A DNA stretch of 55,774 nucleotides from the NCBI GenBank assembly GCA_002269645.1, contig NIVC01002243.1:1-55774 (forward strand), given 5' to 3'. Under the pieces are notes generated by a model. The model had not been told where the DNA came from, searched no databases, and saw only the letters and a program-made list of their open reading frames with translations. Below are positions 281 to 32,384 of the stretch, piece after piece; positions within the stretch are counted from its first letter, which is position 1; each line of letters opens with the position of its first letter. Made by a program: the position numbers and the translations under genes. This DNA comes from Macrostomum lignano. Its lineage: Eukaryota.

Positions 281-296
281 CTCAGTTCATATATTG

Positions 297-4806: not shown

Positions 4807-5327
4807 TTACGATCGAAAGTCCTCCACGCCCGCCTGGGTCATCAGGTCGGCGACGCTACGCTCGAGTTCGTCAATACGCCGGCCCATTTCGTCGATTCGG
4901 CCGGTGATGCGGTCGCTGGTGTGGCCGAAATTGTCGGTCATGCCCTGCAGCATGGCCTGCAGCTGCAGGTGGCGAGGAGGGTAGCGGATCGGTAAGCATA
5001 TCCCGGACTACAGATATTAAAAAACCATAGACAGTTCGTTAGTAATACTCGTTTAAGCTAATATTAATTTAGTAGCTTGAACGAACAGGCCGATCCACGC
5101 AGAATGTCGCTTTAATTTTCGACAGTGCCCAAAAAAGCAATACGCTAAATACTGTTGGCTTGAATCCGGTTCTAACATGGTGTTCCTTAAAGCTTTGTGT
5201 TTTTGCCTTCTTCTGGTTCGTCAAGACGTCCCCAGACCAACAAGCCCCAGCTTACGTGATTCGTGAGCTCTTGGACATTGTGCGGATCAACAACTCCATA
5301 TGATTTATCCTTGGCGAAGTCGGCCAT
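4807..5327 (-). CDS. HSBP1: Heat shock factor-binding protein 1 (75 aa, 2 coding exons)
   Basis: Exon 5327-5256 (MADFAKDKSYGVVDPHNVQELTNH, donor gtaag) plus exon 4962-4807 (LQAMLQGMTDNFGHTSDRITGRIDEMGRRIDELERSVADLMTQAGVEDFRS*). Typical HSBP1 coiled coil ..GRIDxMxxRIDxLExxxADLMTQAGVE. Missing from the ORF track because it is spliced. Confidence 0.92.
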
Positions 5328-5910: not shown

Positions 5911-6266
5911 ACTGACTGACTGACTGACTGACTGACTGACTGACTGACTGACTGACTGACTGACTGACTGACTGACTGACTGACTGACTGACTGACTGAC
6001 TGACTGACTGACTGACTGACTGACTGACTGACTGACTGACTGACTGACTGACTGACTGACTGACTGACTGACTGACTGACTGACTGACTGACTGACTGAC
6101 TGACTGACTGACTGACTGACTGACTGACTGACTGACTGACTGACTGACTGACTGACTGACTGACTGACTGACTGACTGACTGACTGACTGACTGACTGAC
6201 TGACTGACTGACTGACTGACTGACTGACTGACTGACTGACTGACTGACTAACTGACTGACTGACTG
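5911..6266. repeat. (ACTG)n microsatellite, about 89 units
   Basis: Near-perfect actg run with one acta variant near 6250. Confidence 0.98.
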
Positions 6267-6418: not shown

Positions 6419-9400
6419 TCATTTGCAGTAGCCGCAAGTCCTGGCGCACAGACTGCGCATTGAGCGGCACATGTTGCTCTTCTTCACGAACAGGCAGTCA
6501 ACAGGGCGGATTTTGTCTTTGCATTCTGGAAGACGTGCGGGATTCGTGGGATTTGCGGAAGGTATTCAGGAAAGATTAAGTTAAGAATGACAGCTAATGA
6601 AAGCTTTGACTTACTCTGAGTTGAGGCGCACTTCTCGCTGGAGGTGTAACGTTTCGGCACGCAAACGTTCGATCCGGGATACGTGACGTAATATATAAAG
6701 CAGCGGATTCGCTTGCCGCACTTGCACTGAGACACGGTGGACCGATCGCGCGGACATTTCGGCGAGCAAGAGAAAACGGCGAGACTTCGGCGAACAATGC
6801 AGTGACCCTTCACACGGATTGTGTACAGTGTGACTACCTGCCGGATCCATTTCTTGCCGTGACGATAGCACTTGCTAATCAGCTTTCTGGTGACTAAGCC
6901 GCAGTTCTTGCAGCTATAAGTCTTAGCATGAGAGCTGATGCGACATCGGCCATTGACAAAGCGGGCGACGATCTTTGTAATTTTGCGTTGGCCATTTTTG
7001 CACGGTCCGATCAACTGGTAAGAGCCGACTTGGCAACGGACGCAGCGCAGGTTTTTGATTCTGACAGAAACGCGCCACAGACGTAGTTTTTTATCGTAGT
7101 AGACCTGAACTCTAATGTCCTTCTGCCAGCCGGACTTGGAGCAGCGGCTGCGCCAGTGGTAGCCTCTCGGTTGACGCTTGCAAACACCGCAAGTGTAATT
7201 GCACAGATGACGTACGAGGTGCCTGGAACACTTCGACTTCTTGCAGAATTCTCGTCTGTCCTCGCATTTGCGACATGGCACTCGCAGTTTGTGCACCCGC
7301 CTTTGGCAGCTACCGCTGCGATTCCGCTTCCACGTAGCCACCGCTGCTGTCCTGTAGCATACGCGCTGCTTGCCTAATTTGATGCAGCTGCACTTGTATT
7401 GCTTCAGGATGCGGCGGAAGGGACATTTAGTAGGACAGATCCGCTCAAACAAAATACAGTCTCGCGTCTTGCGCAACTTCAGCGACGGGAACCGCAGGAG
7501 GAGACCTCTGCGATTGATTCGCAGAAGGAGACACTTTCGCGTTGAATGATCATAGTCGAATGCCCGGCATTTGCTGTTTTTCTGACAGCTGCTCATGCAA
7601 ACGTCGAATGAGGTGCGCTGAGCCAAAATGAACGAGCGTCGGAAGTGCCGCTGCTTGCTGAGGCAGAAATTTTTGGCATAAATGAGCCGCGTTTTGGGGC
7701 AGCCTGTGGGAGAATTGGTTTTGAATTACAGTTGAAAATATCAATATTCGTGTTCTATAAAGCAAAGTTAGTGCTTACCATAGCAACGATGGCAGGTCCT
7801 CGCGCAAAGACGCTTGGCGAAATACGGGTATTTGTCGCACAATTGAATCTTGTTAGAAGCGGCCCACTTTCTGCATATTCCAGTGGGTAGCAGGTCTCTA
7901 CACTTGGACTTGCATTGCACCACGCGTCTGTAGATCTTCGATACGCATTTACATTTTACAGGCTTGTGAATGACAACAATAACTGCTTGAGTCTTGCCTG
8001 TACATTTTGACACCTTTGTGCGCGCCTTCGGACAACGTATAAGTCTGTAGCTTGTAAACTTTCGAAGCTTGCAACTGTTACCACTTACAAAGAAGCGATA
8101 CTCAGTTACCACTAAGCGGTTGTTTCTAAGGCAACTGTAGCGTTTGTATGGCTTCTGACAGGCGCAAAGCTTCAAGAAAGAATTGGAAACGGTTTTGCAG
8201 CTGCAACCGACGCGTCGCTTCCATGTCTGCACGACTCGCGCGTACTTTTTATTTCCCTTAACGATATTACACGGGCCAGTAACACTATGACGCTTGGAGC
8301 TGCACGTCACACGAACTCTTGAGGTGATCTTGCTGCGTGCAATGCACTTATTTCCAGACTTCTGCCAATAATGGTGAATGTAAACCCACGAGCCGGAGCG
8401 GCACTTCTTGGTTGCGTAACCGCGCCTACATCTGCAAAGCTCATAGCGCGACTTTGTGTACTTGATGCAGACACAATTTCTCTTCTTCCAATAGCACTCG
8501 ACCCACTTTCGATAGAATCCATTCTGTCTGGCAGCACATTTGGATTTTTTCGTTCGAGGTGAAGGACAGCGGACTGGTCGGTAAATTTTGCGAGACACGC
8601 GGCGACAACTGCGTTTGTGGAATTCAAGCCAAGAATGGACTTCAACATGCTGCTGCGAACGTTTGTCGCAGTAGCGGTATTTCTGAAGTTGCCGCTTGCA
8701 ACCTGAAATAACATAACACTTAGGGTTTGTAACTGTTTGATTGAGTAGAAAATTAACTACATTGGTAGAAAATTGAACTTACAGCAAGTTTCCTTCCACA
8801 CTTTATAATGACGCTTGCATTTGCAGTTTCGCACAGTGTACCATATGCTTCCCATACTTCTCTTGCAGCTCGAACGATTGCATTTACCCCTGACTATTTT
8901 TCGAGTCTTGCACGTTACGCGAGAAGTGCGGCATCTGCGGTTTTTGGTGCACCCAGTCGGTTTGAGAGTGTAAGTATAGTGGCAGCGCTGCTGGTGATTT
9001 CCCCGAACGCAGGTGTTGACAACGTGCTGCTTAGGACAACGGCAGCGTATGAGCTGGTGTCGGCGGCCAACCTTACAGCGGCACTGTGCAACATGCCGAG
9101 TTACTATCGTGTCTTTCCTCCAGCCATCTTTGCGACACGGTCCTCGGTGAAGCTTGGAGCGTGGCCGACAGGCTGCATGCACTTGAGCGGAAATGTCATA
9201 CCGGCGCACGCTTCGATGACAGGCGTGCTTCTTGAATCGGTATGAGGTGACAACTCGGTACAGTCTGTTTTTGTAACACTTCTTTTCAACGCTGTCTCTG
9301 TGAATGCAGCAGCACAGCTTCCACCAGCTTTTGGATCTGCGCACGCATTTCTTTCTACGCCGATCCAAATAGAATGTGGTGCGTGTATACACTCTCCTGC

Positions 9401-12400
9401 AGTTGTGTTTGTGACAAGCGGAATGCTTAACGACCGGCTTGGCACAAGCTTTCTTGCAGATTCTCTCAAACAGGCGCGTGGCGGAGAAGTGATACCTACA
9501 GAATGTATGAGTTGAAGCATCTTAACATTGAAACAAGTGTCATAAACTTAATTCAAATACAGAAAATTTGCATCAAAAAGAAATGGTTAACCTACTTGCG
9601 GCGAATTCCAAGTTCCATGTAATGCATTTTGATTGGTTTTGAAGCCAGCCACTTGACGTATAGACCGGATTTGGGAATCGGACGGAAGCCAACAACGAAA
9701 ACGCTGGCTTTGCGCTTAATCTTGTCGGCCAGTGCGACTGTCTTGTGCTGCTTGCTATGTTTGCCGCAGGTAATGATTACTACAATCTTTTCTACACCCG
9801 GTCGGGACTTAGCGTGTAGACGCCTATTGACTTCCTTAAGAGCCCCGCACAAATCGGTTCTTGTGTTGGTAAATGCCTTGATAGGTAGATTTTTCAAATG
9901 CTTCAATTTGTGAACGTGTACATTCCAGTTGTAGGAAACCATAGTAATGTGAACACTTGCAGAGGTGTGCAAAAAGTAGGTGGAAACGGTCTTTAGGAAG
10001 CTGACTATTCGTTTCTTGTAGCCACGCCTGTCTTTTCCGTACAGGTCAACTACCAAGAAAAGATCGACAGCTTTGTGGGCACAAGCGCACTTTCGGAATT
10101 CAGAGCGGACACGGCGCACACAACGGCAGCCAATCTTTACCCAGTAGTGCACGATGTACCGTTGTTTTCCTCCTTTGCACCTTCCCTGGATAGCCCTGAG
10201 CACGCGGCGTGTGCAGTTCACACGCCTGAAAGAGTCCTTTGTTTTTGAGTAACAGCGACCATTTCTTAGCGTGTGAGTAATCCGTCTGATTCGTATCGCA
10301 CCGCGAATACAAACTCGGGTCGTTGTTGCCTTGTTGCAACAGCATTTGCTCTTCTTCACTTGCTTCTTCATAATGCACTTACACTTGCGAACGCTGTATT
10401 GCTTGATTATTACTGTGCGATTACAGCGCTTGCAATTTCGTTGTATGGTCGATTTAGGACATGACACACGCTTTCTAGAGACAGTTCTATAGCTGACGCA
10501 ACGACATCCAACCAAACGCCAACAGTTTCGAATGGCCGCAACTTGATTGCCATTTTCGCACCTGTATGACAAAGTGCACCGACGACAATCAGAGTAGCAC
10601 AGCACTCGTTTGGTTTGCCGTATGCATTTGCATCCAGATCGGACAAAGCGCTTGTATACCTTATAGTATTTTGGTTTTCCTGCTGTACTGTGTGACAGCC
10701 GCCAAGTTGTGTCGCATCGAACCGCCTGTGATTGACGCTTAACGTCCCGCACACAGCGACCACGACTTAATCGGTAAGAATAATGGAATGTAACTATATG
10801 TCCCCGGTGGCAGATCTTCTTTTTGTGTGGCTTCAAACAGCGGCAGACAACCGAACGAGTTTGAACTCTTTTATGACAGCGACATGCCTTTTGATACCAG
10901 GAGACGGTCGTCTCAACCAAATAAAATCCGTACTTTGTTGGTTTACTGCAGCAACTACGAGTCATTTTTTTCGGTTTGCAAAGGATCGGTTTATCCACGC
11001 GACGTGTCTGCTTGAGGCATCTACCATTCGATAGTCTCCACACGGTGATGTAGCGCTCCTTACGACAACGGCCACGAGAACACTTGCAAAGAACTCTTTG
11101 CACTGGCTTCTTGCATTCTGTAATGTTAATGTTAGAAAAAACGATGTTCATTCGCCACCTTGCCTGAGCGGAAGAAAAATGAAAATAAAATTTTAAACGG
11201 GACTCACTGTATCTCAAGAACACAGTTTTGCAGCTTTTCACGCACTTGCAATCCTGCCGCTTAACCGAGCAACGGGTAACCTTCAGCACACCGCCAGGAA
11301 GCTTTTGTTTGGAAACCGTATTATGACGCTTGCACTCTGAAAATATCATGAAACATTTTATATTGCATGTCAAATACTTAAGGTAACATTTCCAGTATTA
11401 AGAGCTAAAAACAACAGCACATACTAATTTTCCTGCTGCTCTTAGTAACCTTCTTGATACACTTCCACTGTTTGAGAACTCGCTTGGTGATAGTTGTGAT
11501 GACGTACCCTCGTTTGCGGTCGCATTTAACTGTGCGTCTGTAGCCCTTACAGCAACACACGCGATGCCGATGATAACTCTTCCAAATGCATTTTTCGCCA
11601 CTGAGAACCTGTTTCTTAAAAAGCAGCCTCTGGCGACACGATTTCTTGTTGCACGGTGCAGTCGAAACTAGTTTGCTACCGCGATGACAACCTGAAAGTA
11701 TTTTGTTTGAGTGTGCATTATTACTTAAAAATAAGATACGTTTGACGCCATGATTTGCACGAACTAAGCTAAAAATTAAACGCAATACTTACCACACGAC
11801 GTATGTGTCCGCGTTACTTTTTTAAAGCATCTGCAGTGCTTAACGTATGGCCTCGTCACAAAAACGTTAAGCTGTCCAGACTTCTTGTTGCAAACCTTTT
11901 TCACTTCACCTGACCACAGCTCAAGCGTTGGCGTCGCTTGCCAACGAGAATTCGTCGACAACGACCACGTACCAGTCGTCGTTCAGTGATTTTCGTGACC
12001 TTTATATGCCAGCCAGACAGCTGTTCTTAACTTGACGACGCTTGTCACAGCCGCAGAGTTGATGAGTAACTTTGCGAACGCTTCGGCATTTGCAGTTCCG
12101 GACTGTCCATTGAATGTGCGTCAGCTTGCGGTACTTGTCTCCATTACGTCCTCTCCTGCACGGACCACGAGTTTTAGTAGACTTCTTACAGCGCACAGCT
12201 TTGCGGGAAACTTTGCTATCTTTATAGCACGCACAGTTACGAAGCTTAGATGCTGTTTTCACTGTGACCAAAATGCGACCATTTTTACAGAAGCGTCGAT
12301 CAGGTATCTTTCGGCAGTGACAGCGGCAGCTGCGTCGGGTCACACGCTTACGACAGAGGCAGTTATTGAGGCTGATTTCGGTCGTTTCAATGTGCTTGAC

Positions 12401-15400
12401 CCCTTTGAAGTTGCACCGCGATTGTTTTACATATCGACCAACTTTGCACGGCACCTTTCTTTTGTGAGTACGTTTTACAAGCTTGCAGTGGGCCTTCAGC
12501 TTCTTGCCAACAAGAAGCCACTTCTTTGTAACTGTCACAACTTCATTGGATATGCACTTCTTTGTGACGACCGTTTTGCGGCACCTGAATTGGTGAATTC
12601 GGTAATTAAGCAACTAGAAAAATAAAACTATGACAGCCACTCATATCAAAGATACATTTTCTAATGTTTTTCTTACCTGCATGGAACAGTCACGCGCTTC
12701 ACGAGTACCCAAATACATTGGCATTTTTTCGCCCGCCGCTGGTACAAATAATAGATGCGGAAACCTTTCCGACTGCAATTTCCGGGCACAATCTTCGCGC
12801 CCTTGCAGCGCACAAGTCGCACCGATTTATGAGACATCTTTTTGCAACCGTAGCCCTTGGGCACCCACCACTCTGTGTAAGTCACCACTTTGTTATTGCC
12901 CACGCATTTAACCAGCTTTTTTCGACCATGCCTCTTAGCGCAGTCACATATACGCGTGTGTTTTCGAGTCACATAGAGGCACTTGCAGTTCTTAGCATAG
13001 ACGTAGATTTTCTTAATAACTTGAACGTATTTATTTCGACTACTGCAGGCACGAGGCATTACCTGTGTGCGAACCCATCGAAGTTTTGTAGAACACGGTA
13101 GTCGATTATTGCGAACGCTACGCTTGCGCTCGCAACTGTTTCCACGCAGATGATAAGTGACGGTCTCGAAAATTTCCAGATTATGCCTCTTGCAAATGCG
13201 CTTCCTGAAGCCTTTTGGGCATTTACAGCGGCGCTTTTTCTTATGGGCCACATATTTCACGCATTTTTTCTGAGGCTTGTTAGTTCCTGGTATATTCTTT
13301 CCGGTTGGCTTGAGCTTATAAGCCAGCCAGATGTCAAGAGCGAACCAGCCAACACACTTCCCGCGGACATATTTTCGTACCGAAGAACAAGCACAGCGCT
13401 GCTTGTACACAGTCGTCTTCGACTTGCATCCGCATCCGACAGCATAGTAGATGGTTTTGAAAATTTTGCGGAAACCTTTTTGACATCGTGAAAATTTATA
13501 GACGGGATTTTTTCTACCACACCGCACTAGTTTAGTGTAAACTGTTCGCTTGGGGATGCACCTGTAACGACGCAGCTTGTAGCTAATAGTAACAGTCACC
13601 CACATATGCCGACTAGTGTCGCATGATCGCTTAGTGACACTTTTCTGACAACAGCACCTCAGCTTCTCCACGCGCACCCGTCGAGTAACGCACTTGCAAT
13701 TGATAGGTTTAGAATTGTAGTGGTGCACGATGAATCCACAGCGGTGACATTTGGTTTTTTTACTATAGGTTCCTCTGCAGCGTATCTTTTTGTCGCTTCG
13801 TTTCAATCGGCGTCTGCAGATCCGTGCTCCTCGCACCGGGTGGAATGTAAAGAGATCAGTGCGCCGGGTGTTATTGTTCACACACCGATTAACTCGTTTC
13901 GCCTTTCGGCACCGACAGATTCGGTATTTCAGGCTTTTTTGCTTCCAAACGCAGCCGCATCGTCCGTTGCTAACCAGGCGCAACAGACGGATCTCAGAAT
14001 ACCTGTCGCCATATTTGTTAAGCTTGCATTTTCCAGTAACCGTTTTGATCTCGAGCATTCTGAAAATTAACCGTATAATTTGCATCAATTTTGCATCTAA
14101 ACAATCTAGGCTGAATGCGAAAGCAACTGAGTGTTTTAATTTGCCACAACTGTCATCATCAACTTACTAATTTTCTTGTGTCGTGTCTGCACTTTTCTGA
14201 TACATTTGTAGCCAACCAGCTTGTAGAAGACAGTTGTATGGCGAACAGTTGAGCCACCGATACACTTTGAAAAGCGGCGCGTCCTGTACTTGCTGATTAG
14301 TTTGCACACGCATGGAACCCAGCGCACGATATGCTGACGCACGCACCTACACTTTCGGTTTACTTTCCATTCAGTTATGAGCTTCTGATAGCCCCGATGG
14401 CTACTTCCTCGGGCTGTGACGCAGCTGCCACGAATAATCCTGCTTCTACGTCGCCCATCGCAATCTATGGAGTTGGTGGTTATTGAATTTCCAATGAACG
14501 CGCAATTCACCGGTCAGGAATACGAGCAGAAAATATGTAAGTAGGCAGAAGCCGATTTATTACTTACATACAGGTTTCGCCACTTTGGAGACGGATCGGA
14601 CGCATCGCTCCCCAATCAGTTTGTATCGGAAATTGTAGTTATAAATGCGCCGCGCTTGCATTCAGTCCTGGAACTATTCTTCTTGTGACAGTCGCAGTCA
14701 GCCCGCCTGGTCTGTACACGCCTTTCACATTTGCACTTCTTCTTGTTAAGGTGCCACACGTATCGCGTGATTATTCGGCGGCAGCGGATGCACGGACCGC
14801 GTTTTTCTCTTGGCGCAGAGCAAGTGTGCGGCCGACTGCGGCACTGCTTCAGTTTTAAACAACGCTGCTTTTGTCGCTGCAGTTGGTAGCTGATCTGACA
14901 AGTCTTCCAGCGACCACGTCCATCGCACACTGTAAACTTGCGATCCTTCAGACATGCGCACAGATATCTGTGCCTCCTTACCTGCCGGATGCACTCTCGA
15001 TTCTTCAGTGTGAAGTATATCACTGTTTTTACCATATACCGATTGCGGCACTTGCCCCATCGAACTTTCGGAGGCTGGCAGCCTGGTTGATAAAACGAAA
15101 ATGTTTTAAAAGTTGCATTAGTTTTCCAGCAGATAACACTGAATAGGTAGAAGGAACAATAATATAAAAAACTCACGACATCTTCCACTATAGCGCTTCA
15201 GCCTCTTAACGCATTTGCAACCGACTATGTGCCAGGTAGTTACCACTTTTCTCCAAAGCCCGGTGCGTCGATCACAATGTTCTTTCTTCTCCCCTCTGGG
15301 ACATCGGACATTCACGTATCGATAGCTCTTCCTGGATACGACTTTAAGCTGTGGAACCCGCACTCGACCATCGCGATCCTTCAAGAGGGGCTTGCTCGGG

Positions 15401-18400: not shown

Positions 18401-21400
18401 GCATTGACCATGAACCAGCTTCCAAGTTTTGTAGTACCACACCCGATATCGATTCTTTTTACAAACTGGACCCGACACGGACGGTTTTGGGCAGCAGCAG
18501 GTTTTGTAGCGATAGTAAGTGCGCCTCTTGCATTTACATTTGTCCATTGAATATGTAAAATACGTGATGCGCCGTCGACAAGTCTTTTTATTGCACTCGC
18601 CAACTGCAGGACTTTTTCTTGGACAACTGACGCAGTTAGTCCTGCGGTTGATCTTAGCAACGCATACCCGACGCCGTCCATCAAATTTATAACTCGTGTA
18701 AGTGGTCACCCAGCAGTTTTTCAAGCACTTCGTGTTTTTATGCGGCTTCTTAATGCAGCAGCACCGTCTCCTGTGTCGGTTGCGCACAACGTTCTTGCAA
18801 CGACAGCGCGGTTTATCAACTACACTTATTAGAGTGTGTACGGACTGATAGCAATTCCCTTTATTGCATCTGTAGAGTATTGGAATCAGAATATGCGAAT
18901 AAGTTTAATTGTTTGCCTGCTAAAACAAATAAAAAAAAAGATTAAGTAACAATCACCTTCCAACTTTTATGACTGGCTTTTGCTTGCAGCTCCAGCGATG
19001 CAGAAAACGGTTGCGAACGCGCCGTCTACAGCGCCAGTTGTGCAGTTGGTAGTAGATTTTCTTTTCGTAGACGCTGCTGTTCTTGCAAAATTTGCTAAAC
19101 CGTGGCTTCGTCAGGCAACAGCAGACGCGCTTACGGCCAGTCAGGCGTTGCCTCTTTTCACAGCGGCACCGCTTAGCTTTATAGTATGTTACCTATTGAA
19201 GGAAAAGTAAGGACTGGATTCAATAACTGCTCATTTAAATGTGAAAATTTATGCTAACTACCTGTTGGTGACTGTGGCATGAGCGACGATTACATTTCAA
19301 CCACTTGTAAGTTTTTCTGGTCGAACAGGACACTTTCTCGCGGCGGCGCGTCTTCCATTTCGGCAACCGCAGCGCCGTCCGGTAAGAGGAGCATTGTGCG
19401 TGAAAACTCTCTCCCATTCGTCAAAAGTGTTGGAACCTTTGGGGCAGCAGCAGGGACAGCGCCGCCGTTCAATCGCAGAAAAGTAGCAGGCGCATCGCTT
19501 TGGATCCAGGCGCCGCTCCAGCGTATAAATGTATCGGTGACAGCCTTGACAAGAGGCGTCGGTGTCTGTAGACTTTTTTATAGCAGGCGTATTTTTTAGA
19601 ATGAACCGCACTGACTTCGTCACCCACTTTCCGGCCTCGCAATATCGGCGCTTGTAGCCTTTGGGGCAGCGGCAACGGATCTGGCGGGTGAACTGGCGCT
19701 TGGTGCGACACCGACGATGCTTCATGTCCCACACGCGAACTTCAACTACTTCGCGACGTGTATAGCCATGTCGTGGGCACTTGCCGCGTCGGATAATTCG
19801 CTTACAGTCTAGCAAAGAAAAAACAAGGTAAAAAAATTTAGCGGAATTTATACTAACTATGATTTATTAAGAAAGTATAATACTTACGGCAATTTCTCTT
19901 TCGTTTGAGTCGCTTTTCAATGCACTTGCAACCCTTGCGCTCGTGGTAGATCGTTGTCTCAATGTAGTATTTGTTTTTGATGCACTTGCTGTTGACATAT
20001 CGCTTCTTGCTGCGACACACTGCGAAGGGTAATGGTGGCTTTTAGAAACAAGTGTTATTTTGTACAGTTCCCTATTTTTTGTGATAATAGCACCTGGCGC
20101 GTTTTTTTAGTCAAGCTGCAAAAGTCTGTCGTCTTATGCCACGATTAGACTATGCTTCATGTGCTTGAAGACTAGAATATTTAACAACAGTTGATTAACT
20201 TACAAACTCGGTGACTCGTGGTCTTCTTCTTAGTAACGCACACGTGGCGTCGGTTGCTCCACCTTCTTGTTATTCGGACTTTTATTATTTCACCTTGCAC
20301 CTTTTTACAATAGCGTTTAAGCTCAACTTTTTTGCCACTGCAACCGCATTTGACGTGTTTGCGCTGTACGAGTTTGACACACTTGCAGTTCCTCTTCACT
20401 GAGTAGTACCTCAGCACCAACTGCAGGCGCCTGGCCTCGTTGCAGTTTCGCTTCTCATAGTAGGCTCGAGGACAGCGGAAGTTTCTGTAGGTCTTCTTAG
20501 ATCGTTTAACACACCTGCCGCGCACCAGGACGAAGTGAAATTTTTCGGTTCCCTTGCGGTTCTTGCGCTTGTCGCAGAAGTGCACGGTCAGCCGGCCTGC
20601 TTGCTTGTTTTCTCGGTGGCAATCTAAAGTTATTTTGTAAATTGCCTTCTAATCACGAAATTTCAACTCAATATTAGCAGTAGTTTTTCACAATTTTACT
20701 TACTGCATCTCTGCCTCTTGTTGTGCACAGACCAGACTAGGCGGCATTTGCAATTCTTGGGTCGCATTACACCGATGTAGATAACCTTAACGCCGCTCTT
20801 AGGCTTGCATTCCGATCTTTTCTGAACTTTGCAGGAGCATTTTACCTTTTTTCTTTCTATACGACTTCGCTTCAGGCAGCGGCCTTTCGACAGAATCCAA
20901 AAAGTGATTTTCTTCTCGAAGGCGTTTCGTTTGGGATTGCAGTAGCTGCGGCCCGTTATTGGCTTTGGACATCCTGTTTTGTATGAATGAGCATGGTGTG
21001 AGTTGAGGTTATTGGCTTTGGGCATCCTGTTTTGTATGAATGAGCATGGTGTGAGTTGAGGTTATAGGCTTTGGACATCCTGTTTTGCATGAATGAGCAT
21101 GGTGTGAGTTGAGGTTATAGACTTTGGACATCCTGTTTTGCATGAATGAGCATGGTGTGAGTTGAGGTTATAGACTTTGGACATCCTCTTTTGCATGAAT
21201 GAGCATGGTCTGAGTTGAGGTTATAGGCTTTGGACATCCTGTTTTGCATGAATGAGCATGGTGTGAGTTGAGGTTATAGACTTTGGACATCCTCTTTTGC
21301 ATGAATGAGCATGATCTGAGTTGAGGTTATAGGCTTTGGGCATCCTGTTTTGTATGAATGAGCATGGTGTGAGTTGAGGTTATAGGCTTTGGACATCCTC

Positions 21401-24400
21401 TTTTGCTTGAATGAGCATGGTGTGAGTTGAGGTTATAGGCTTTGGACATCCTGTTTTGCTTGAATGAGCATGGTGTGAGTTGAGGTTATAGGCTTTGGAC
21501 ATCCTGTTTTGTATGAATGAGCATGGTCTGAGTTGAGGTTATAGGCTTTGGACATCCTGTTTTGCATGAATGAGCATGGTGTGAGTTGAGGTTATTGGCT
21601 TTGGACATCCTGTTTTGTATGAATGAGCATGGTGTGAGTTGAGGTTATAGGCTTTGGACATCCTGTTTTGCATGAATGAGCATGGTGTGAGTTGAGGTTA
21701 TAGACTTTGGACATCCTGTTTTGCATGAATGAGCATGGTCTGAGTTGAGGTTATAGGCTTTGGACATCCTGTTTTGTATGAATGAGCATGGTCTGAGTTG
21801 AGGTTATAGACTTTGGACATCCTGTTTTGCATGAATGAGCATGGTTTGAGTTGAGGTTATAGGCTTTGAACATCCTGCCTTGCTTGAATGAGCATGGTGT
21901 GAGTTGAGGTTATAGGCTTTGGACATCCTATTTTGCTTGAATAAGCATGGTCTGAGTTGAGGTTCTAGGCTTTGAACATCCTGCCTTGCTTGAATGAGCA
22001 TGGTCTGAGTTGAGGTTATAGACTTTGGACATCCTGTTTTGCATGAATGAGCATGGTGTGAGTTGAGGTTATAGACTTTGGACATCCTGCCTTGCTTGAA
22101 TGAGCATGGTCTGAGTTGAGGTTATAGGCTTTGAACATCCTGCTTTGCTTGAATGAGCATGGTCTGAGTTCAGGCAGCTCAGAAGAGATCAGAGAGGCGA
22201 TGGATCAGCAGTGTAAACATAATATGTATTATTAATATGATTCGATACTTACCGCAACGAAGCTTCTTCGTGGTCGTTCTCTTCAGACATTGGCAGTCTT
22301 TTCTATACCACCACTGTCTGTAGTGCGTGACAATGCCGGTACGCTTGTTGCAGTGCTTCCACTTCTTAACAGTTTTGCTGCAGCGAACAGGCACTCTGCG
22401 ATCGTGCACCTTAGAGATGCATTTGTTGCAACCTTGCAGACGCCAGATTATGTGTCGAGTGACTTTTTCACGGCGAACTTTGTCGCAAAAGCGAATTATT
22501 TTCTTCGATCGGCAGTGCGTTCTACAGACTCGTTTGGTAATTCTCACCCGGCACTTGCACTTCGAGACGTACCAGCTGTAAGTAGCCAGATAGTAGTAAC
22601 CCTTCTTCGGATGGGGAATCCTTTTGGTCTCCGGCTTTCGATTGCAGTGCACCCGCTTACTGCTTGTTTTGTATACTTTACGGCATCTGTACGCTTTCAG
22701 TTGATAATAGCTAATTTGCCGCATCTGATACTGATTCTTCCTGCACCAATTTTTCACGCGCCGGTTGGGCCGGCAGCAGCATCGGAAGTGAAGCCTCTTA
22801 AAGATATGCTCACGGCAACGCTTTCCAAAAGCTTTGTAGAAATAGAAAAGCTTGGAGAACGTGCACTGGCGACCGCAGTTCTTCGTAGTGCAACCCTTAG
22901 GACACTTTGTTACCCTGGTGTGTTTGCCGCCGCGGCAGCCGCACATTTCGCGAGCGACGCGTTTTGCCGGGACGCAGGAGCAGCTGCCTGAGCGTCGCTT
23001 GTAATACCGGAACTCAACCCGCCGGTAGCGAACGTTGCCCGACAGCAGGCGACATGGACCCGCTAGTCGTTTCACATCGCGTCTGCACTCTGAAAATGGA
23101 ATTAAATCGGTTTTATAAGCGACATGGATCGGCACCATCAATAAAGCTTCAATTGCTAATCGACAGTCATTCTGTCTCCACTTACTGACAGTAACCTTCT
23201 TCGTCAACGTTCTCTTAATGCAGTTGTTTCCTTTTTTCTCATACCAAAACTTCGTGAAGATGCGCTGACCTTTTCGTCCGTCGCAACTAACAATTACACC
23301 ACCTTTCGGGCATTTGATTCGGATTTTGCGAATAATAATCTTTTTTATACAGCGATATTTTATCAGTGTATAAGTCACAGTAATGATCTTCTTCCAGTAT
23401 TGATTAATGCGAGCAACAACTCTGGAGGTACGCGGACAGCCTGAAATTCAGTAATAAACTTGTCTATTAATTTCAAAAGTAGAAACTATTTTGACGAGTT
23501 GAAATACAAAAACTCGTACAAAAATACCTACAGCATTTTCCGATGTGCTTTACTTTGGAGTACTTCCGGCACTTGCAGTTGCGCACGTGAAAATAGCTGA
23601 TATGCCTAAAAGCCTTGCAAGAGCGTCGATGACAGCGCACAAAATTTTGTTGGTTACGATCGCAGCGGATTTTCCGTGTCCTTTTTGTTTGATGAGGCAC
23701 GCAGCGGCCGTTCTTCAGCTTCCAGTGGGTCGTCACGATCAGATAGTAGCTGCCTTTGCAGACAGAGACAGACTTTGGCTTGCTGCAGCGGCACATAATT
23801 TTCTTCCGGCTCACTTTGCGAGACCGGCAGCGACATTTGTGAGCATAGCGCTTATAGGTGATTCGAAAGTAGTATTTGCGGCCTGGAGTGCACTTTCCAG
23901 TGTGGAAGAAGCCTGTACAGTCTGAAATTTTTGTTGTTAGAGTAAAGTTTCGATGCAAACGCGAGTTCAGTGGAGAAGCGCTTAAGATGCTCGCTAGCTA
24001 ACTTACTGATTTTCCTCACAACTTTTGTGCTCGTTTTTCTCTCGCATCGAGAACAACGTCTTGTAGGCTTATACGTTTTGGTGATTCGCACTGTGACAAC
24101 ATTATTCCTGCACTCGGTATAGCTGATGCTCTTCTTCTTGCCAATGGGCGGACAAGGGCACTTGCGCTTAATAAGAAGTAGAACTCTTACACACCTCTTC
24201 TTTCCGTGCTTCTCTCGGTACTGCAGAAGTCGCTTGCCAATCTGCACACCTTTGCAATAGTTGCAGTTGTACCAACGGACTTTGCTTATGTACGGGCAAG
24301 CTGCAATCGAGAAAGCAGTGAAACATTAGCTCATAATATGTGTAGAAATACTATTGGCTCCAGACAGAAAATACGCTTCCAGCTTACCTCCGCAAGGATG

Positions 24401-26992
24401 GTAGCGTATCAGTACGCTCTTTCTGCACCGGCCTCTGGAGTCTGGAAACCAGCGAAGCGTGGTAACAGCCTTGTTCTTGTATTTGTCCGAGCACTTTGAC
24501 ACTATGCGTCGCTTAGCTGAGCAACCTGGAATAGAAAGTTTTGCAGACTCAATTTAAGCACGTGTTCGCCATTTAAATACACGAGCGTAGCAACGAGTTG
24601 GGTGACGACGAACTTACAGCATTTATTCGGTTGGCAGGTGGCCTGGCACATGACGCGATAAAACTGTTTGCTACATTTGCCCTTCTTCTTTATCTGTTCG
24701 CAAAGGAGCGTGCTTATCTGGTTGCGACAATGAGGCGTGCACATGCCGCAGGTGAGCCGGCAGAACCTGCCCATCACTTCTGGGTATCTACGACATCTGC
24801 CTTGGGCCTTCCAGTGGCGGCACTTGTGGTGCGACACTCGGTCGATGCACAGCTTGGCCAGACACTCGCAGTGTTTTGGCTTCACGCACTTGGTGCCATC
24901 CAATACGTAGCCTTTGTTGCAGCGACATCCCTCCGCTTTCGGAAGCTTGTAACAACGCCTCGGGGTGCCGAAGAAATGGTTGTCGCAAGTCTTCGGGCAG
25001 GGGTTCGCTTTGCGGCTAAAGTGTTGGTGCCGACCGCAACTCAGGACTGAAAATCAAAATCGCCAGATTGTTAACGAGATTTCTCTATTTCAGCTCGCTT
25101 ATAGTCTCGTATGCCTAAAAAGATTCCCATCTCACCGCAGCCGCTCTTGTGTCTCCAGGCGATTGGACGGTGATTACGGGCGCATCGTCTCGAGTGCAGG
25201 TAGAAATTGGCGCACAGAACTTTCCTCTGCAGGTCTGGGCGATACCTGGTGCTGCAGTAATCGATCACGCATGGCCTCAGGACCTCCGTGTTTGAACAGC
25301 CATGGCGTCCAATTACTTTTCTGCAAGCTCTCTCAGCCTCTCGACTCTCTTTTTTAGTATGGCACCCGCACTTCTTTGGCCGACCTTTGCAGTTCTTCAC
25401 CCAGCCTTTGCTCTTCCACAGCTTGTAGGCGTGGCTCAGATTGCCGAAGTTGTCGTTGGCCTTGTTGCCATCGCAGTTGCCAGCAAGGCCGGACACTCGG
25501 CCTCTGTATAACTTGGAGCTCAGGCGGAACGTGGCCGTAAACTCGCCGTCAAAGGTCACCCAGAATCCGCACTTGTTGCTCACCAGTACGAGATCCTCGC
25601 CAGAGTAGAAAGCTCGAATTTTGTGCTCGCTGTACGGCACATTCACGGACTTTCCGTTCACCTGACCGAAATATAATTCAGGGTACCCGTAGTTATTAGA
25701 GGTATTTTTCAAAACTCTACCATTCCTAAAGACTAAGTTTTTTTTGCGAGTTTAAACCACTCACCAGCAAGCGTCGTCCTCTCAGCAGCTTGAATTCTTT
25801 GCCATCAAGCTTGACTATCAGCGCTTTCAATCGTGACAGTCCGTGACGATGCTTTTTATGGTGCTTGTGCTTGGACTTTGAGCAGCCAAAGCTGGCGTAC
25901 AGCTCCAGATGGCAGAGCTTGAGATGCGAACGGGCCAGCAAAAACTGGCAGCCTCGAGAGAAAGTCGTCACGTGACCGCCATCAAACTGATAGATATGGC
26001 CGTTGGCCCCTCCGACGCTTCCGTAGCATTGTTCAACTGTTAATTGGAAGTAACAGAGCAATTCATCAGGGTCGTGTGCCAGCCATGGGATTGGGTCAGG
26101 GTCGTGTGCCAGCCATGGGATTGGGTCAGGGTCGTGTGCCAGCCATGGGATTGGGTCAGGGTCGTGTGCCAGCCATGGGATTGGGTCAGGGTCGTGTGCC
26201 AGCCATGGGATTGGGTCAGGGTCGTGTGCCAGCCATGGGATTGGGTCAGGGTCGTGTGCCAGCCATGGGATTGGGTCAGGGTCGTGTGCCAGCCATGGGA
26301 TTGGGTCAGGGTCGTGTGCCAGCCATGGGATTGGGTCAGGGTCGTGTGCCAGCCATCATGGTGCCAGCCATTGGGTCAGGGTCGTGTGCCAGCCATGGGA
26401 TTGGGTCAGGGTCGTGTGCCAGCCATGGGATTGGGTCAGGGTCGTGTGCCAGCCATGGGATTGGGTCAGGGTCGTGTGCCAGCCATGGGATTGGGTCAGG
26501 GTCGTGTGCCAGCCATGGGATTGGGTCAGGGTCGTGTGCCAGCCATGGGATTGGGTCAGGGTCGTGTGCCAGCCATGGGATTGGGTCAGGGTCGTGTGCC
26601 AGCCATGGGATTGGGTCAGGGTCGTGTGCCAGCCATGGGATTGGGTCAGGGTCGTGTGCCAGCCATGGGATTGGGTCAGGGTCGTGTGCCAGTCATGGGA
26701 TTGGGTCAGGGTCGTGTGCCAGTCATGAGATTGGGTCAGGGTCGTGTGCCAGTCATGGGATTGGGTCAGGGTCGTGTGCCAGTCATGGGATTTAACCTGC
26801 TCCGCCATCGGCGCTAATAACATTTGTCCCACGAGTTCAAAGAATCTTTAAAAACCTGTGATTTAACTGCATGCAGAAGTGTAGATCTTAGAAAAGTGTT
26901 TTCAACTCACCATGTCTCGCATTCACGCTTTGCGACTGTGTGGCCAGGAAGGCCAGCAGGAGGACAATTGTCAGGCTCGGAGACCACCCCAT
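6419..26992 (-). CDS. Giant secreted Cys/Lys/Arg-rich multidomain protein, about 5,309 aa, 30 exons (signal peptide, vWD-C8-TIL, 2 ShKT, Cys-repeat array, vWA, Cys repeats, ShKT, PAN, 2 ShKT)
   Basis: Hand-built GT-AG exons, 5'->3': 26992-26911 (MGWSPSLTIVLLLAFLATQSQSVNARH), 26036-25765, 25661-25136, 25046-24618, 24525-24388, 24300-24007, 23921-23532, 23440-23186, 23089-22253, 20973-20704, 20623-20204, 20019-19888, 19808-19262, 19192-18957, 18869-17965, 17881-17597, 17511-17375, 17288-16113, 16031-15177, 15082-14568, 14464-14168, 14059-12677, 12584-11793, 11691-11425, 11336-11208, 11117-9596, 9495-8783, 8702-7779, 7703-6615, 6525-6419 (ends ..CARTCGYCK*). Phases are consistent once six missing bases are restored; no premature stops. 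Confidence 0.85.
6422..7905 (-). other. C-terminal ShKT, PAN/apple, ShKT, Cys repeats, ShKT region
   Basis: ShKT CRDLLPTGICRKW..LCDKYPYFAKRLCARTCHRC; PAN SFDVCMSSCQKNSKCRAFDYDHSTRKCLLL; ShKT CEDRREFCKKSKCSRHLVRHLCNYTCGVC; terminal ShKT CKDKIRPVDCLFVKKSNMCRSMRSLCARTCGYC. Confidence 0.8.
9600..10075 (-). other. Degenerate vWA domain of the giant protein
   Basis: VDLFLVVDL...IVSFLK...VHITMVSY...TRTDLCGAL...RPGVEKIVVIITCG...LADKIKRKASVFVVG follows the vWA strand/helix pattern. Confidence 0.8.
20961..22169. repeat. 53-bp minisatellite (about 23 copies) in intron 9 of the giant gene; the unit contains the exon-10 splice acceptor
   Basis: Unit ggctttggacatcctgttttgtatgaatgagcatggtgtgagttgaggttata, period 53 (20961, 21014, ...). 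Confidence 0.95.
24618..25046 (-). other. TIL domain followed by two ShKT domains (exon 4)
   Basis: TIL: CGRHQHFSRKANPCPKTCDN..RRCYKLPKAEGCRCNKGYVLDGTKCVKPKHC. ShKT: CIDRVSHHKCRHWKAQGRCRRYPEVMGRFCRLTCGMC and CRNQISTLLCEQIKKKGKCSKQFYRVMCQATCQPNKC. Confidence 0.85.
25136..26036 (-). other. vWF type D domain plus C8 domain of the giant protein (exons 2-3)
   Basis: C..VGGANGHIYQFDG...CQFLLA...VNGK.V.VP...CGFWVTFDG...YRGRVSGLAGNCDGNKAND, followed by the C8-like ..ACRKVI...PCVIDYC...VLCANFY...RCA...IAWRHKSGC. Confidence 0.85.
26067..26790. repeat. 30-bp minisatellite (about 24 copies) in intron 1 of the giant gene
   Basis: Unit gggattgggtcagggtcgtgtgccagccat, with one irregular unit near 26358-26372. 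Confidence 0.97.
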
Positions 26993-32361: not shown

Positions 32362-32384
32362 GAGCGTATGTAATGTGCGCGTGG

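What the first reader, a model, noticed from the sequence alone, without database searches (positions are those of the whole stretch)
6419..26992. About 5,300-aa secreted polycationic protein built mostly from an unassigned Cys-rich repeat
Between a mucin/vWF-type N-terminus (vWD-C8-TIL) and C-terminal vWA/PAN/ShKT modules lie dozens of roughly 40-50-aa units. They alternate C-x(7-9)-C..(L/V)xxGxC..C and C..GxC..C..CxC..C(C)C patterns, are rich in Lys, Arg, Val and Thr, and contain very few Asp/Glu. They lack the Trp ladder of canonical TSP1 repeats and I cannot assign a Pfam family. The design suggests a disulfide-stiffened cationic fibre for mucus, adhesive, rhabdite or egg-case secretions, possibly binding polyanions or microbes. 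Flatworm adhesive proteins are known to pair vWD/C8/TIL/vWA with K/R-rich regions; this is an analogy, not an identity.
Basis: partly seen in the sequence, partly recalled or inferred. Interest (0 to 1): 0.8.

Follow-up and report, generated by a model that had tools for sequence, protein, structure and literature searches.

The report
Giant cationic flatworm protein, undescribed repeat
The window holds a real, intact gene of the flatworm Macrostomum lignano for a 5,309-residue secreted, extremely positively charged protein made of 93 copies of a small disulfide-stapled beta-sheet module that no domain or structure database describes, although related giant proteins occur across free-living and parasitic flatworms.

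Summary
A minus-strand gene runs from ATG 26992 to stop 6419-6421 (30 exons, 5,309 aa). The order is signal peptide, VWD, Cys-rich linker, TIL, two ShK, 79 repeat units, VWA, 11 units, ShK-like, PAN, ShK-like, 3 units, terminal ShK. Composition is Cys 9.9%, K+R 28%, D+E 3.4%, pI about 10.5.

The window is a whole contig of Macrostomum lignano Mlig_3_7. Six one-base gaps break the frame, but a second gene copy carries the missing base at every site, so these are PacBio errors and not decay. GenBank holds only a 1,526-aa fragment (PAA59660.1).

The roughly 44-aa unit alternates as A and B variants. It has no Pfam or PDB match. AlphaFold2 models it confidently (pLDDT 97 and 92) as a three-stranded beta-meander, and Foldseek finds no PDB analogue.

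A profile search finds 111 relatives, and every named one is a platyhelminth. Echinococcus granulosus W6UV63 aligns co-linearly over nearly its full length but is not cationic. The module is therefore flatworm-wide, and the extreme charge is lineage-specific.

It is not the known adhesive Mlig-ap1. The function (a multimerising, polyanion-binding secreted scaffold) is inferred, not shown.

The parts
6419..26992 (-). Whole gene: 30 exons, 5,309 codons plus stop. GenBank annotates only the first ~1,500 codons (PAA59660.1, BOX15_Mlig029998g6, partial).
   Evidence: Gene model. PAA59660.1 (P0008) matches model residues 1-1513 at 99.3%. Source contig.
26911..26992 (-). Exon 1: ATG in Kozak context, signal peptide MGWSPSLTIVLLLAFLATQS, phase-1 GTGAGT donor.
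26066..26792 (.). 30-bp minisatellite (24 copies) inside intron 1. It is open in several frames but is not coding.
   Evidence: The intron 1 acceptor lies at 26037.
25449..26001 (-). VWD domain (residues 40-189), split by one intron.
   Evidence: Pfam PF00094, E 4.9e-14, 53.4 bits.
25039..25448 (-). Cys-rich linker in the position of C8 (residues 190-296, 10 Cys).
   Evidence: Cys pattern read directly from the sequence. No Pfam C8 hit at E<=10.
24868..25038 (-). TIL domain (residues 297-353).
   Evidence: Pfam PF01826, E 7e-07, 29.7 bits.
24524..24849 (-). Two ShK-type modules (residues 360-396 and 398-437).
   Evidence: The first passes the Pfam ShK gathering score. The second shows only the 6-Cys pattern, with weak Crisp/PLAC hits.
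10081..24523 (-). Repeat array I: 79 alternating A/B units of ~44 aa (residues 438-4204) across 21 exons. Introns are ~80-100 nt, phase 1, at unit boundaries.
20955..22174 (.). 53-bp minisatellite filling the one long intron (1.28 kb). Each copy repeats the splice acceptor and the first ~20 nt of the next exon.
   Evidence: There are 21-23 copies here against 7-10 in the second gene copy.
23090..23185 (-). In-frame, stop-free intron that a naive ORF reading would translate.
   Evidence: It is removed in the transcript-based product PAA59660.1.
19358..19359 (-). Assembly 1-nt deletion number 1 in coding sequence. The others are at 17384, 14629, 14043, 12007 and 11906.
   Evidence: The second copy L003 carries one extra base at each of the six sites. 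Inserting those bases gives one uninterrupted ORF.
9438..10071 (-). VWA domain (residues 4208-4385), with a degenerate MIDAS motif (DLYGK instead of DxSxS).
   Evidence: Pfam PF00092, 29.1 bits. MIDAS comparison.
7909..9437 (-). Repeat array II: 11 units (residues 4386-4868).
7783..7902 (-). ShK-like module (residues 4871-4910).
   Evidence: Pfam ShK 17.5 bits, below the 20.9 cut-off.
7435..7701 (-). PAN/Apple domain (about residues 4913-5001).
   Evidence: Pfam PF00024, E 4e-08, 33.5 bits.
7180..7266 (-). ShK-like module (residues 5058-5086).
   Evidence: Pfam ShK 13.6 bits.
6625..7035 (-). Three further repeat units (residues 5135-5271).
6422..6523 (-). Terminal ShK module, ending at the stop codon.
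   Evidence: Pfam ShK 17.6 bits. Sequence.

Best explanation
WHAT IT IS (shown). This is an intact, transcribed Macrostomum lignano gene. It encodes a 5,309-aa secreted protein in which 93 copies of a ~44-aa module make up about 77% of the chain. The module has 4-5 Cys and comes in two homologous variants (A and B) that alternate strictly. It defines a domain family that is not in Pfam and has no PDB sequence or fold match. Every member I could put a name to is a platyhelminth, and the family is used to build giant extracellular proteins together with VWA, VWD, ShK and PAN modules. This gene is the orthologue of Echinococcus granulosus W6UV63 and differs in two ways: it has an N-terminal VWD-linker-TIL-ShK head, and its charge is shifted from about +0.04 to about +0.25 per residue.

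HOW IT MOST LIKELY WORKS (inferred). The signal peptide sends the protein into the secretory pathway. Each unit folds into a three-stranded antiparallel beta-meander (one short strand and two 12-residue strands) held by two or three disulfides. Consecutive units share a CxC/CCC junction, so the array would form a long, semi-rigid, protease-resistant rod. By analogy with gel-forming mucins and VWF, the VWD-TIL head allows disulfide-linked multimers. The result would be a polymeric polycation (net about +1,300 per chain, evenly spread). Its role would be to bind, condense or cross-link polyanions such as sulfated glycans, mucus, glycocalyx or microbial surfaces in a secreted matrix. VWA (MIDAS lost) and PAN would add protein or glycan contacts.

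The confidence of 0.55 is for the whole statement. The 'what it is' half alone would rate about 0.9, and the functional half about 0.4.
For: GENE AND INTACTNESS. Gene model. The transcript-based GenBank product equals the model over residues 1-1513 (annotation method in PMC5730564). The second copy supplies the missing base at all six frame breaks, with only 6 substitutions against 15 indels in 11.3 kb.

REPEAT ANATOMY. Cys spacing. 49 di-unit and 93 single-unit HMM hits in ABAB order. A versus B by hhalign: probability 93.5%, E 2e-7. Units are only 17-35% identical, with only the Cys conserved. The optional loop Cys co-occurs with the middle Cys of CCC (26/0 versus 3/12, Fisher p 6e-8), as expected for a disulfide pair. 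Exon lengths are multiples of ~44 aa with phase-1 introns.

NO KNOWN FAMILY. Pfam. PDB sequence profile. Foldseek against the PDB for the 2-unit and 4-unit models: best E 0.5-0.7, TM <= 0.37.

FOLD. AF2 pLDDT 97.1 with pTM 0.69 for 2 units and pLDDT 91.7 with pTM 0.51 for 4 units. Every unit shows the same beta1-beta2-beta3 pattern.

FAMILY. 111 hits among 1.84 billion representatives, 27 at E <= 1e-30. All named members are flatworms. Full-length co-linearity with the Echinococcus protein.

CHARGE..

FLANKING MODULES..
Against: No expression site, binding assay or phenotype is available, so the functional half of the statement is inference from composition and domain content. The orthologue in Echinococcus and most trematode and monogenean relatives are near-neutral, so polyanion binding cannot be the family's conserved activity. 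The C8 module that normally accompanies VWD in multimerising D-assemblies is not detected, and there is no CTCK dimerisation knot, so multimerisation is uncertain. pTM falls from 0.69 to 0.51 with four units, which allows for flexible junctions. The window copy lacks two short Cys-bearing segments that the other copy has, so one or two units may be damaged in this copy.
Confidence: 0.55

Rival explanations
1. The protein is a conserved structural component of flatworm extracellular matrix, such as basement membrane, sub-tegumental or sub-epidermal matrix, or a duct lining. Its job would be mechanical, a long disulfide-stabilised spacer or rod with VWA/PAN anchoring. The high charge in Macrostomum would be a secondary compositional drift with no specific polyanion-binding role.
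For: Full-length orthology with a near-neutral cestode protein of the same size and module order. Relatives occur in monogeneans, trematodes and cestodes, which lack rhabdites and duo-gland adhesive organs. VWA and PAN are typical matrix modules. A Taenia genome paper lists 'collagen alpha-3(VI) chain' genes among presumed tegumental components, but by annotation name only (PMC8384839).
Against: A shift to 28% K+R and 3.4% D+E, kept uniform over 5,000 residues, is hard to see as drift. It also recurs in several other family members (P0003, P0007, P0016). There are no expression data either way. The Taenia statement rests on a misnomer and may concern other genes.
Confidence: 0.25
2. It is a component of the duo-gland temporary adhesive of M. 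lignano, acting like Mlig-ap1 as a cationic cohesive protein that is released by a polyanion.
For: Same species. M. lignano adhesion depends on a polycationic cohesive protein, and polyanions such as heparin block it (PMC6410801). It shares VWD and TIL modules and a high Cys content.
Against: The adhesive-gland screens traced all ten adhesive-organ transcripts to Mlig-ap1 and Mlig-ap2, and double RNAi removed the adhesive vesicles entirely (PMC6410801). The architecture differs: no C-lectin, no EGF array, and structured Cys-rich units in place of Cys-free GRK low complexity. The orthologue exists in cestodes, which have no such organs.
Confidence: 0.07
3. It is a decaying pseudogene or an assembly chimera, so there is no 5,309-aa protein.
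For: There are six frame breaks in the contig. GenBank annotates only a 1,526-aa partial product. The right half of the contig contains 100%-identical palindromes that look like assembly artefacts. Two short in-frame deletions relative to the other copy remove Cys residues.
Against: All six breaks are single-base deletions. There are no in-frame stops in about 16 kb of K/R/C-rich coding sequence. The other copy has the missing base at each site and carries its own private one-base deletions elsewhere. Substitutions are 6 in 11,310 bases, against 15 indels. The assembly is Canu on PacBio reads. All splice sites are canonical, and the transcript-based annotation follows them.
Confidence: 0.03
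4. It is a defensive polycation: a surface or mucus barrier protein that agglutinates or kills microbes, possibly co-regulated with the neighbouring antimicrobial-peptide-like genes.
For: Extreme positive charge. ShK and PAN modules are frequent in secreted defence proteins (my own knowledge). A small gene 2.1 kb upstream on the same strand, present in three copies on the contig, encodes a signal peptide, an acidic propiece and a cationic amphipathic C-terminus ending in GK.
Against: The evidence is purely circumstantial. The AMP-like ORF has no Pfam match and is itself unverified. Two of its three copies lie in suspect palindromic sequence. The neutral orthologues argue against an ancestral antimicrobial role.
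Confidence: 0.1

Closest known systems
Echinococcus granulosus EUB62272.1 / XP_024353468.1 / UniProt W6UV63 (5,275 aa, auto-named 'Collagen alpha-3(VI) chain')
   Same: Nearly the same length. It has the same ~44-aa A/B Cys module (53 profile matches, E 3e-186). The order is the same: array, VWA, array, ShK, PAN, ShK, units, terminal ShK. A single BLASTP HSP covers our 401-5308 and its 64-5275.
   Different: It has no N-terminal VWD-linker-TIL-ShK head. Its MIDAS motif is intact (DESVS against our DLYGK). It is near-neutral (K+R 15.2%, D+E 11.6%, against 28% and 3.4%). It is only 22-23% identical and is uncharacterised. The name is an annotation artefact of its VWA domain.
Macrostomum lignano paralogues (PAA50356.1/A0A1I8GF89, PAA86075.1, PAA75931.1/PAA91016.1, PAA94294.1, PAA78532.1) and the near-identical second copy PAA60779.1
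   Same: They share the repeat module and combinations of VWA, VWD and ShK. Several share the VWD-TIL-ShK head. PAA60779.1 is the same gene on another contig, at 97.8-99.9% identity.
   Different: The paralogues are 25-27% identical and less cationic (K+R 17-26%, D+E 6-10%). Their module orders differ, for example VWA_4 x2 then VWD in PAA86075.1. All are annotated as hypothetical.
Mlig-ap1, the cohesive protein of the M. lignano temporary adhesive (GenBank MH586844; PMC6410801)
   Same: Same species and similar size (5,407 aa). It is secreted and very rich in Lys and Arg, and contains VWD and TIL. Its function depends on positive charge and is blocked by polyanions.
   Different: In ap1 the charge sits in Cys-free, low-complexity GRK regions at both ends, and the Cys-rich core is C-lectin, vWD-C8-TIL and 17 EGF. 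Here the charge is built into 93 folded disulfide-rich units, and there is no lectin or EGF. The two proteins are analogous at most, not homologous in their cationic parts.
Gel-forming mucins / von Willebrand factor D-assemblies
   Same: An N-terminal VWD followed by a Cys-rich segment and TIL directly after the signal peptide, in a giant secreted protein with a long central repetitive region.
   Different: There is a single D-assembly rather than three or four. C8 is not detectable. There is no CTCK, and no Ser/Thr/Pro-rich O-glycosylated mucin domain: only 12 N-glycosylation sequons, and the repeats are folded beta modules.
Thrombospondin type-1 repeat (TSR) arrays, as in SCO-spondin, hemicentin and Mlig-ap2
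   Same: Small (~45-60 aa), elongated, three-stranded antiparallel disulfide-bonded modules rich in basic residues, strung in long tandem arrays in extracellular proteins. The TSR description comes from my own knowledge.
   Different: There is no WxxW or CSxxCG motif at all. Cys number and spacing differ. No Pfam TSP_1-type hit appears at E<=10. No TSR structure appears among the 50 listed Foldseek hits in either search.

Membership tests
Thrombospondin type-1 repeat (Pfam TSP_1 and relatives) | WxxW(xxW) tryptophan ladder on strand A | tested here: not met
   0 WxxW motifs in 4,253 repeat residues. W makes up 1.6-1.7% of residues and is scattered.
Thrombospondin type-1 repeat (Pfam TSP_1 and relatives) | CSxxCG motif and a 6-Cys pattern in ~55-60 aa | tested here: not met
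   0 CSxxCG motifs. Units are ~44 aa with a C-x8/9-C-x18-22-C-x12-C spacing or the CxC variant.
Thrombospondin type-1 repeat (Pfam TSP_1 and relatives) | Match to the family HMM | tested here: not met
   No TSP-type Pfam hit for four-unit stretches at E<=1 or for 31 di-units at E<=10.
Mucin/VWF-type D-assembly (VWD-C8-TIL) | VWD domain | tested here: met
   PF00094, E 4.9e-14, 53.4 bits, residues 40-189.
Mucin/VWF-type D-assembly (VWD-C8-TIL) | C8 domain between VWD and TIL | tested here: inconclusive
   A 107-aa linker with 10 Cys occupies the position, but there is no Pfam C8 hit even at E<=10.
Mucin/VWF-type D-assembly (VWD-C8-TIL) | TIL domain | tested here: met
   PF01826, 29.7-32 bits, above the 24.5 cut-off.
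Mucin/VWF-type D-assembly (VWD-C8-TIL) | Disulfide-linked multimerisation | not testable with these tools
   This needs non-reducing gels or EM of the native or recombinant protein.
Flatworm adhesive protein ap1 (Mlig-ap1 / Mile-ap1 / Tmed-ap1) and ap3 | C-type lectin plus vWD-C8-TIL plus a long Ca-binding EGF array | tested here: not met
   No lectin or EGF Pfam hit anywhere in the protein. Architecture of ap1 is from PMC6410801 and PMC9229212.
Flatworm adhesive protein ap1 (Mlig-ap1 / Mile-ap1 / Tmed-ap1) and ap3 | Cationic regions that are Cys-free, low-complexity G/R/K repeats | tested here: not met
   Here the cationic regions contain 10% Cys in a fixed framework and fold into beta units.
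Flatworm adhesive protein ap1 (Mlig-ap1 / Mile-ap1 / Tmed-ap1) and ap3 | Expression in adhesive gland cells and presence in footprints | not testable with these tools
   The published screens assign all adhesive-organ transcripts to ap1 and ap2.
Unnamed platyhelminth giant-protein family with the ~44-aa A/B Cys module (type: E. granulosus W6UV63) | Tandem ~44-aa modules matching the di-unit profile | tested here: met
   The profile was built from this gene. It recovers 111 proteins, 27 of them at E<=1e-30, with up to 53 matches per protein.
Unnamed platyhelminth giant-protein family with the ~44-aa A/B Cys module (type: E. granulosus W6UV63) | Co-linear non-repeat modules (VWA, ShK, PAN, ShK, terminal ShK) | tested here: met
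   BLASTP of ours 4162-5308 against Eg 4029-5275 gives E 5e-58. A full-length HSP scores 810 bits.
Unnamed platyhelminth giant-protein family with the ~44-aa A/B Cys module (type: E. granulosus W6UV63) | Restriction to Platyhelminthes | tested here: inconclusive
   All named members among the 30 representatives looked up, plus Schistosoma and Heterobilharzia, are flatworms.
VWA domain | HMM match | tested here: met
   PF00092, 29.1 bits, above the 23.8 cut-off.
VWA domain | MIDAS motif DxSxS | tested here: not met
   DLYGK in this protein, against DESVS in the Echinococcus orthologue.
ShK/ShKT domain | Six-Cys pattern and HMM at gathering score | tested here: met
   Residues 360-396 score 22.9-29.3 bits against the 20.9 cut-off. 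Four further modules have the Cys pattern but score 13.6-17.6 bits or not at all.
PAN/Apple domain | HMM match | tested here: met
   PF00024, 33.5-34.4 bits against the 21.4 cut-off.
Processed or decaying pseudogene | Frame breaks that are real, plus nonsense mutations and loss of splice sites | tested here: not met
   There are only single-base deletions, each filled in the second copy. There are no premature stops, and the splice sites are canonical.

The most novel reading that the evidence does not exclude
The ~44-aa module is a previously undescribed extracellular fold: a three-stranded, disulfide-stapled beta-meander in obligate A/B alternation. On the names available it arose in, and is confined to, Platyhelminthes. 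Flatworms, including the major human and livestock parasites, use it to build half-megadalton rods. Macrostomum has 'supercharged' one ancient orthologue to about +1,300 net charge. That would make it a folded polycationic polymer with a role in secreted matrices (mucus, adhesion or release, or an antimicrobial barrier), mechanistically distinct from the disordered GRK polycations known from flatworm glue.
Probability: 0.4. Interest if true: 0.72.

Novelty: new variant of a known kind. Interest (0 to 1): 0.6.

Why it matters
There are four reasons.

1. **An uncurated domain family.** Its members are among the largest predicted proteins of flatworms, including Echinococcus, Schistosoma, Paragonimus and Dicrocoelium. 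They are currently labelled 'hypothetical', 'VWFA domain-containing' or, wrongly, 'collagen alpha-3(VI)'. A phylum-restricted giant extracellular protein is a candidate structural, diagnostic or vaccine-relevant component and deserves a proper family definition.

2. **A testable new fold.** AlphaFold2 models the module at very high confidence from paralogous repeats alone, and it has no PDB analogue. This makes it a cheap and concrete target for structure determination.

3. **A natural experiment on charge.** Two orthologues share the same architecture but differ about seven-fold in net charge per residue. They can be used to ask what extreme positive charge on a folded scaffold does. This bears on the charge-based attach-and-release chemistry already shown for Macrostomum glue, and on bio-inspired adhesives and coatings.

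4. **A practical annotation point.** Uncorrected PacBio indels fragment giant repetitive genes in Mlig_3_7. A near-identical second copy can be used to repair them.

Tried and rejected
- **Word-indexed protein search** with one 391-aa repeat exon found nothing. The exhaustive profile search later showed this was a sensitivity limit and not true absence.
- **Pfam on the repeats** at E<=0.01, <=1 and <=10 gave only scattered single chance hits.
- **PDB sequence-profile search** gave nothing below E = 1.
- **Foldseek against the PDB** with the 2-unit and 4-unit models gave only long-hairpin look-alikes such as GFP barrels and EFF-1, all non-significant.
- **Identity with Mlig-ap1** was considered because of species, size and K/R content. 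It was rejected on architecture.
- **Pseudogene** was considered after the frame breaks appeared. It was rejected with the second copy.
- **My first placement of one frameshift** (about 19312) was wrong. The second copy puts it at 19358. It also revealed a sixth break at 17384, which restores a canonical TGC A|GTGAGT donor.
- **The 30-bp and 53-bp tandem arrays** are open in several frames, but both are intronic.
I rebuilt them from within-exon pieces.
- **Exact look-up of P0043** failed. P0043 is a messy alternative model and confirms only one 3' junction.
- **Literature searches** for locus tags and accessions returned nothing.
- **Smp_335600**, a 'ShKT-domain protein' used as a protonephridial marker, could not be linked to the family. 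Schistosomatid members retrieved are labelled VWFA proteins.
- **The 'collagen alpha-3(VI)' mention in a Taenia genome paper** is based on the name only.


Full report

Yes. Stop-free, Cys-rich and Lys/Arg-rich segments lie on the minus strand from about 25.7 kb down to 6.4 kb. Splice-site analysis shows short introns (mostly 80-100 nt), nearly all phase 1, with donors of the type TGC A|GTAAGT and acceptors just before a Cys codon. Exon 1 starts at the ATG at 26992 (ACCATGG) and encodes a signal peptide. Intron 1 contains a 30-bp minisatellite. The last exon ends with a ShK module and a stop codon at 6419-6421.

Pfam confirms VWD, TIL, ShK, VWA and PAN_1. It does not detect C8, even at E<=10. 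Composition is Cys 9.9%, Lys 14.0%, Arg 13.9%, Asp+Glu 3.4%, pI about 10.5 and net charge +1304. K+R stays at 22-33% in every 250-residue window beyond the first.

**2. Source, and whether the gene is intact.**

An exact look-up of a small neighbouring ORF shows that the window is the entire contig NIVC01002243.1 of GCA_002269645.1. That assembly is Macrostomum lignano Mlig_3_7, a Canu assembly of PacBio reads. Its GenBank annotation derives from RNA-seq transcript assemblies (PMC5730564).

The contig does not give one open frame. I found single-base frame breaks inside otherwise perfect repeat units. GenBank annotates only a 1,526-aa partial product, PAA59660.1, which ends at the first break. 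That product matches my model over residues 1-1513 at 99.3%. It also confirms an in-frame, stop-free intron that I had suspected.

A second copy of the gene lies on contig NIVC01002112.1 (L003). Over 11.3 kb the two copies differ by 6 substitutions and 15 indels. L003 carries one extra base at each of the six positions where the window's frame breaks (19358, 17384, 14629, 14043, 12007, 11906). L003 also has private one-base deletions where the window is intact. This is the signature of long-read assembly error, not decay. With the six bases restored, the gene reads as 30 exons and 5,309 codons without interruption.

**3. Anatomy of the repeat.**

Cys-to-Cys spacings show a strict super-repeat...C-x-C (or CCC)-x8/9-C-x18-22-C-x12-C-x9/10-C-x16-18-C-x-C-x10-C.... 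An HMM iterated on the protein itself finds 49 di-units covering about 4,180 residues. Single-unit HMMs find 93 units in almost perfect ABAB order: 79 before the VWA, 11 after it and 3 after PAN. The A and B halves are homologous (hhalign probability 93.5%, E 2e-7).

Units are only 17-35% identical, and only the Cys framework is conserved. The array is therefore old and diverged, not a recent amplification. About 30% of B units carry an extra loop Cys. This extra Cys co-occurs with a CCC junction in place of CxC (Fisher p 6e-8), as expected for an additional disulfide. Exon sizes are multiples of about 44 aa, so introns mark module boundaries.

**4. Is it a described domain?**

Not in the resources available here.
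- Pfam gives nothing for the repeats at E<=1. At E<=10, 31 di-units give only scattered single chance hits.
- A PDB sequence-profile search gives nothing.
- There is no WxxW and no CSxxCG motif, so it is not a TSP1 repeat.
- AlphaFold2, given only the paralogous units as its alignment, models two units at pLDDT 97.1 (pTM 0.69) and four units at pLDDT 91.7 (pTM 0.51). Each unit is a short strand followed by two 12-residue antiparallel strands, and about 70% of residues are in strands.
- Foldseek finds no PDB analogue for either model (best E 0.5-0.7, TM <= 0.37).

One caveat applies. I could not inspect the coordinates, and short disulfide-rich modules are hard for Foldseek. 'New fold' is therefore likely but not proven.

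**5. Relatives.**

The word-indexed search missed everything. An exhaustive HMMER profile search of 1.84 billion representatives found 111 proteins at E<=1e-3 and 27 at E<=1e-30. Many are giant, with up to 53 matches per protein.

Every named member I looked up is a platyhelminth. There are several M. lignano paralogues. The others are Echinococcus granulosus, Sparganum proliferum, Echinostoma caproni, Paragonimus kellicotti, Dicrocoelium dendriticum, Trichobilharzia regenti, Heterobilharzia americana, Schistosoma haematobium and the monogenean Cichlidogyrus casuarinus. All are labelled hypothetical, VWFA-, VWFD- or ShKT-domain proteins. Unnamed hits come from Logan and JGI assemblies. One is a 12.9-kb intronless contig from run SRR8820788 that encodes a 4,171-aa cationic member in one uninterrupted reading frame.

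The best non-Macrostomum match is E. granulosus W6UV63 (5,275 aa, auto-named 'Collagen alpha-3(VI) chain'). It aligns in a single HSP from our residue 401 to 5308 and its residue 64 to 5275. The module order is the same: VWA, ShK, PAN, ShK, units, terminal ShK. It scores above M. lignano's own paralogues, so I treat it as the orthologue.

It is not cationic (K+R 15.2%, D+E 11.6%), and neither are most neodermatan relatives. It also keeps the VWA MIDAS motif that our protein has lost.

**6. What it most likely does.**

Shown: it is a secretory-pathway protein made of extracellular modules. It is rich in structural disulfides and overwhelmingly beta, and it belongs to an ancient flatworm family.

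Inferred: the array forms a long, semi-rigid rod. The VWD-TIL head may give disulfide-linked multimers, as in mucins and VWF. The uniform, extreme positive charge makes this Macrostomum orthologue a folded polycationic polymer. It would bind, condense or cross-link polyanions in a secreted matrix.

Because the neutral orthologues share the architecture, the family's ancestral role is probably mechanical or scaffolding, with the charge as a derived specialisation.

The main rivals are a plain ECM role with incidental charge, a duo-gland adhesive component, an antimicrobial barrier, and a pseudogene. The adhesive rival is disfavoured because the published screens account for the adhesive transcripts with ap1 and ap2. 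The antimicrobial rival is circumstantial. The pseudogene rival is rejected.

**7. Comparison with what is known.**

It is not Mlig-ap1. That protein's cationic parts are Cys-free GRK low complexity flanking a lectin/vWD/EGF core. The resemblance to mucins and VWF is limited to the N-terminal head. The resemblance to TSR arrays is topological only.

**8. Novelty and verdict.**

The gene and its relatives already sit in databases as uncharacterised or mis-named fragments. No paper in the searchable library mentions their identifiers. What is new:
- the full-length model of the gene;
- recognition of the module as an undescribed domain family that, as far as names are available, is flatworm-only, with a confident predicted fold;
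- the orthology to the cestode giant protein;
- the charge shift between the two orthologues.

I rate it a new variant of a known kind (giant modular secreted Cys-rich proteins), with interest 0.6.

Noticed in passing
window 29093-29362 (-), 33947-34216 (+), about 44219-44488 (+): An 89-aa ORF is present three times, and one copy is slightly diverged. It has a signal peptide (MRWQFVLGLLLCAALAAA), an acidic Glu/Asp-rich propiece and a cationic amphipathic C-terminus (KKWLLRRIRIRWRRVLRVASRAYRIYRHLPLGK) ending in GK, a possible amidation signal. The layout is that of an antimicrobial-peptide precursor. It has no Pfam hit. It is called as a gene in the public collection. One copy lies 2.1 kb upstream of the giant gene on the same strand.
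   Followed up: partly
window 44793-48473 versus 49689-53370; also 28736-29675 versus 33634-34573, and 29780-32332 versus 41368-43801: Large inverted duplications. Three blocks are 100% complementary and together form a ~4-kb-arm palindrome centred near 49.08 kb. This suggests either a fold-back artefact of long-read assembly or a very recent palindrome. The right half of the contig should be treated with caution.
   Followed up: partly
window 20955-22174: A 53-bp minisatellite fills the gene's only long intron. Each copy reproduces the 3' splice site plus the first ~20 nt of the following exon (...ACAAAACAG|GATGTCCAAAGCC), so about 22 potential acceptors are lined up. Copy number is 21-23 here and 7-10 in the second gene copy.
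   Followed up: partly
window 26066-26792 and 5911-6266: A 30-bp minisatellite (24 copies) in intron 1 is open in several frames and could be mistaken for a 10-aa coding repeat. An (ACTG)89 microsatellite starts ~150 nt downstream of the stop codon.
   Followed up: partly
window 35769-36343 (-): Two exons of a mitochondrial carrier gene (Pfam Mito_carr, E 2.5e-11), embedded among 32-bp minisatellite arrays.
   Followed up: partly
window 26320-19570 versus 19567-8255, compared with L003 (NIVC01002112.1): The two gene copies are about 97.8% identical over the 5' third but 99.95% identical (substitutions) over the 3' two-thirds. This suggests gene conversion between homeologues or a mosaic or collapsed assembly. 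Near 19423-19570 the window copy lacks 15 nt (RRCVK) and about 39 nt relative to the other copy, which removes Cys residues from one or two units.
   Followed up: partly
window 30263-33249 and 41263-43318; 35038-38859: Long arrays of 15-, 21-, 31- and 32-bp minisatellites occupy much of the non-genic part of the contig. This fits the reported very high repeat content of this genome.
   Followed up: no
family members P0003 (L004, Logan SRR8820788), P0007, P0032, P0052, P0110: Several unnamed relatives are even more cationic than the window's protein: up to 32-37% K+R with under 1% D+E, and some are Arg-dominated. The source organisms are unknown. If they come from other free-living flatworms, supercharging of this module is recurrent.
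   Followed up: no
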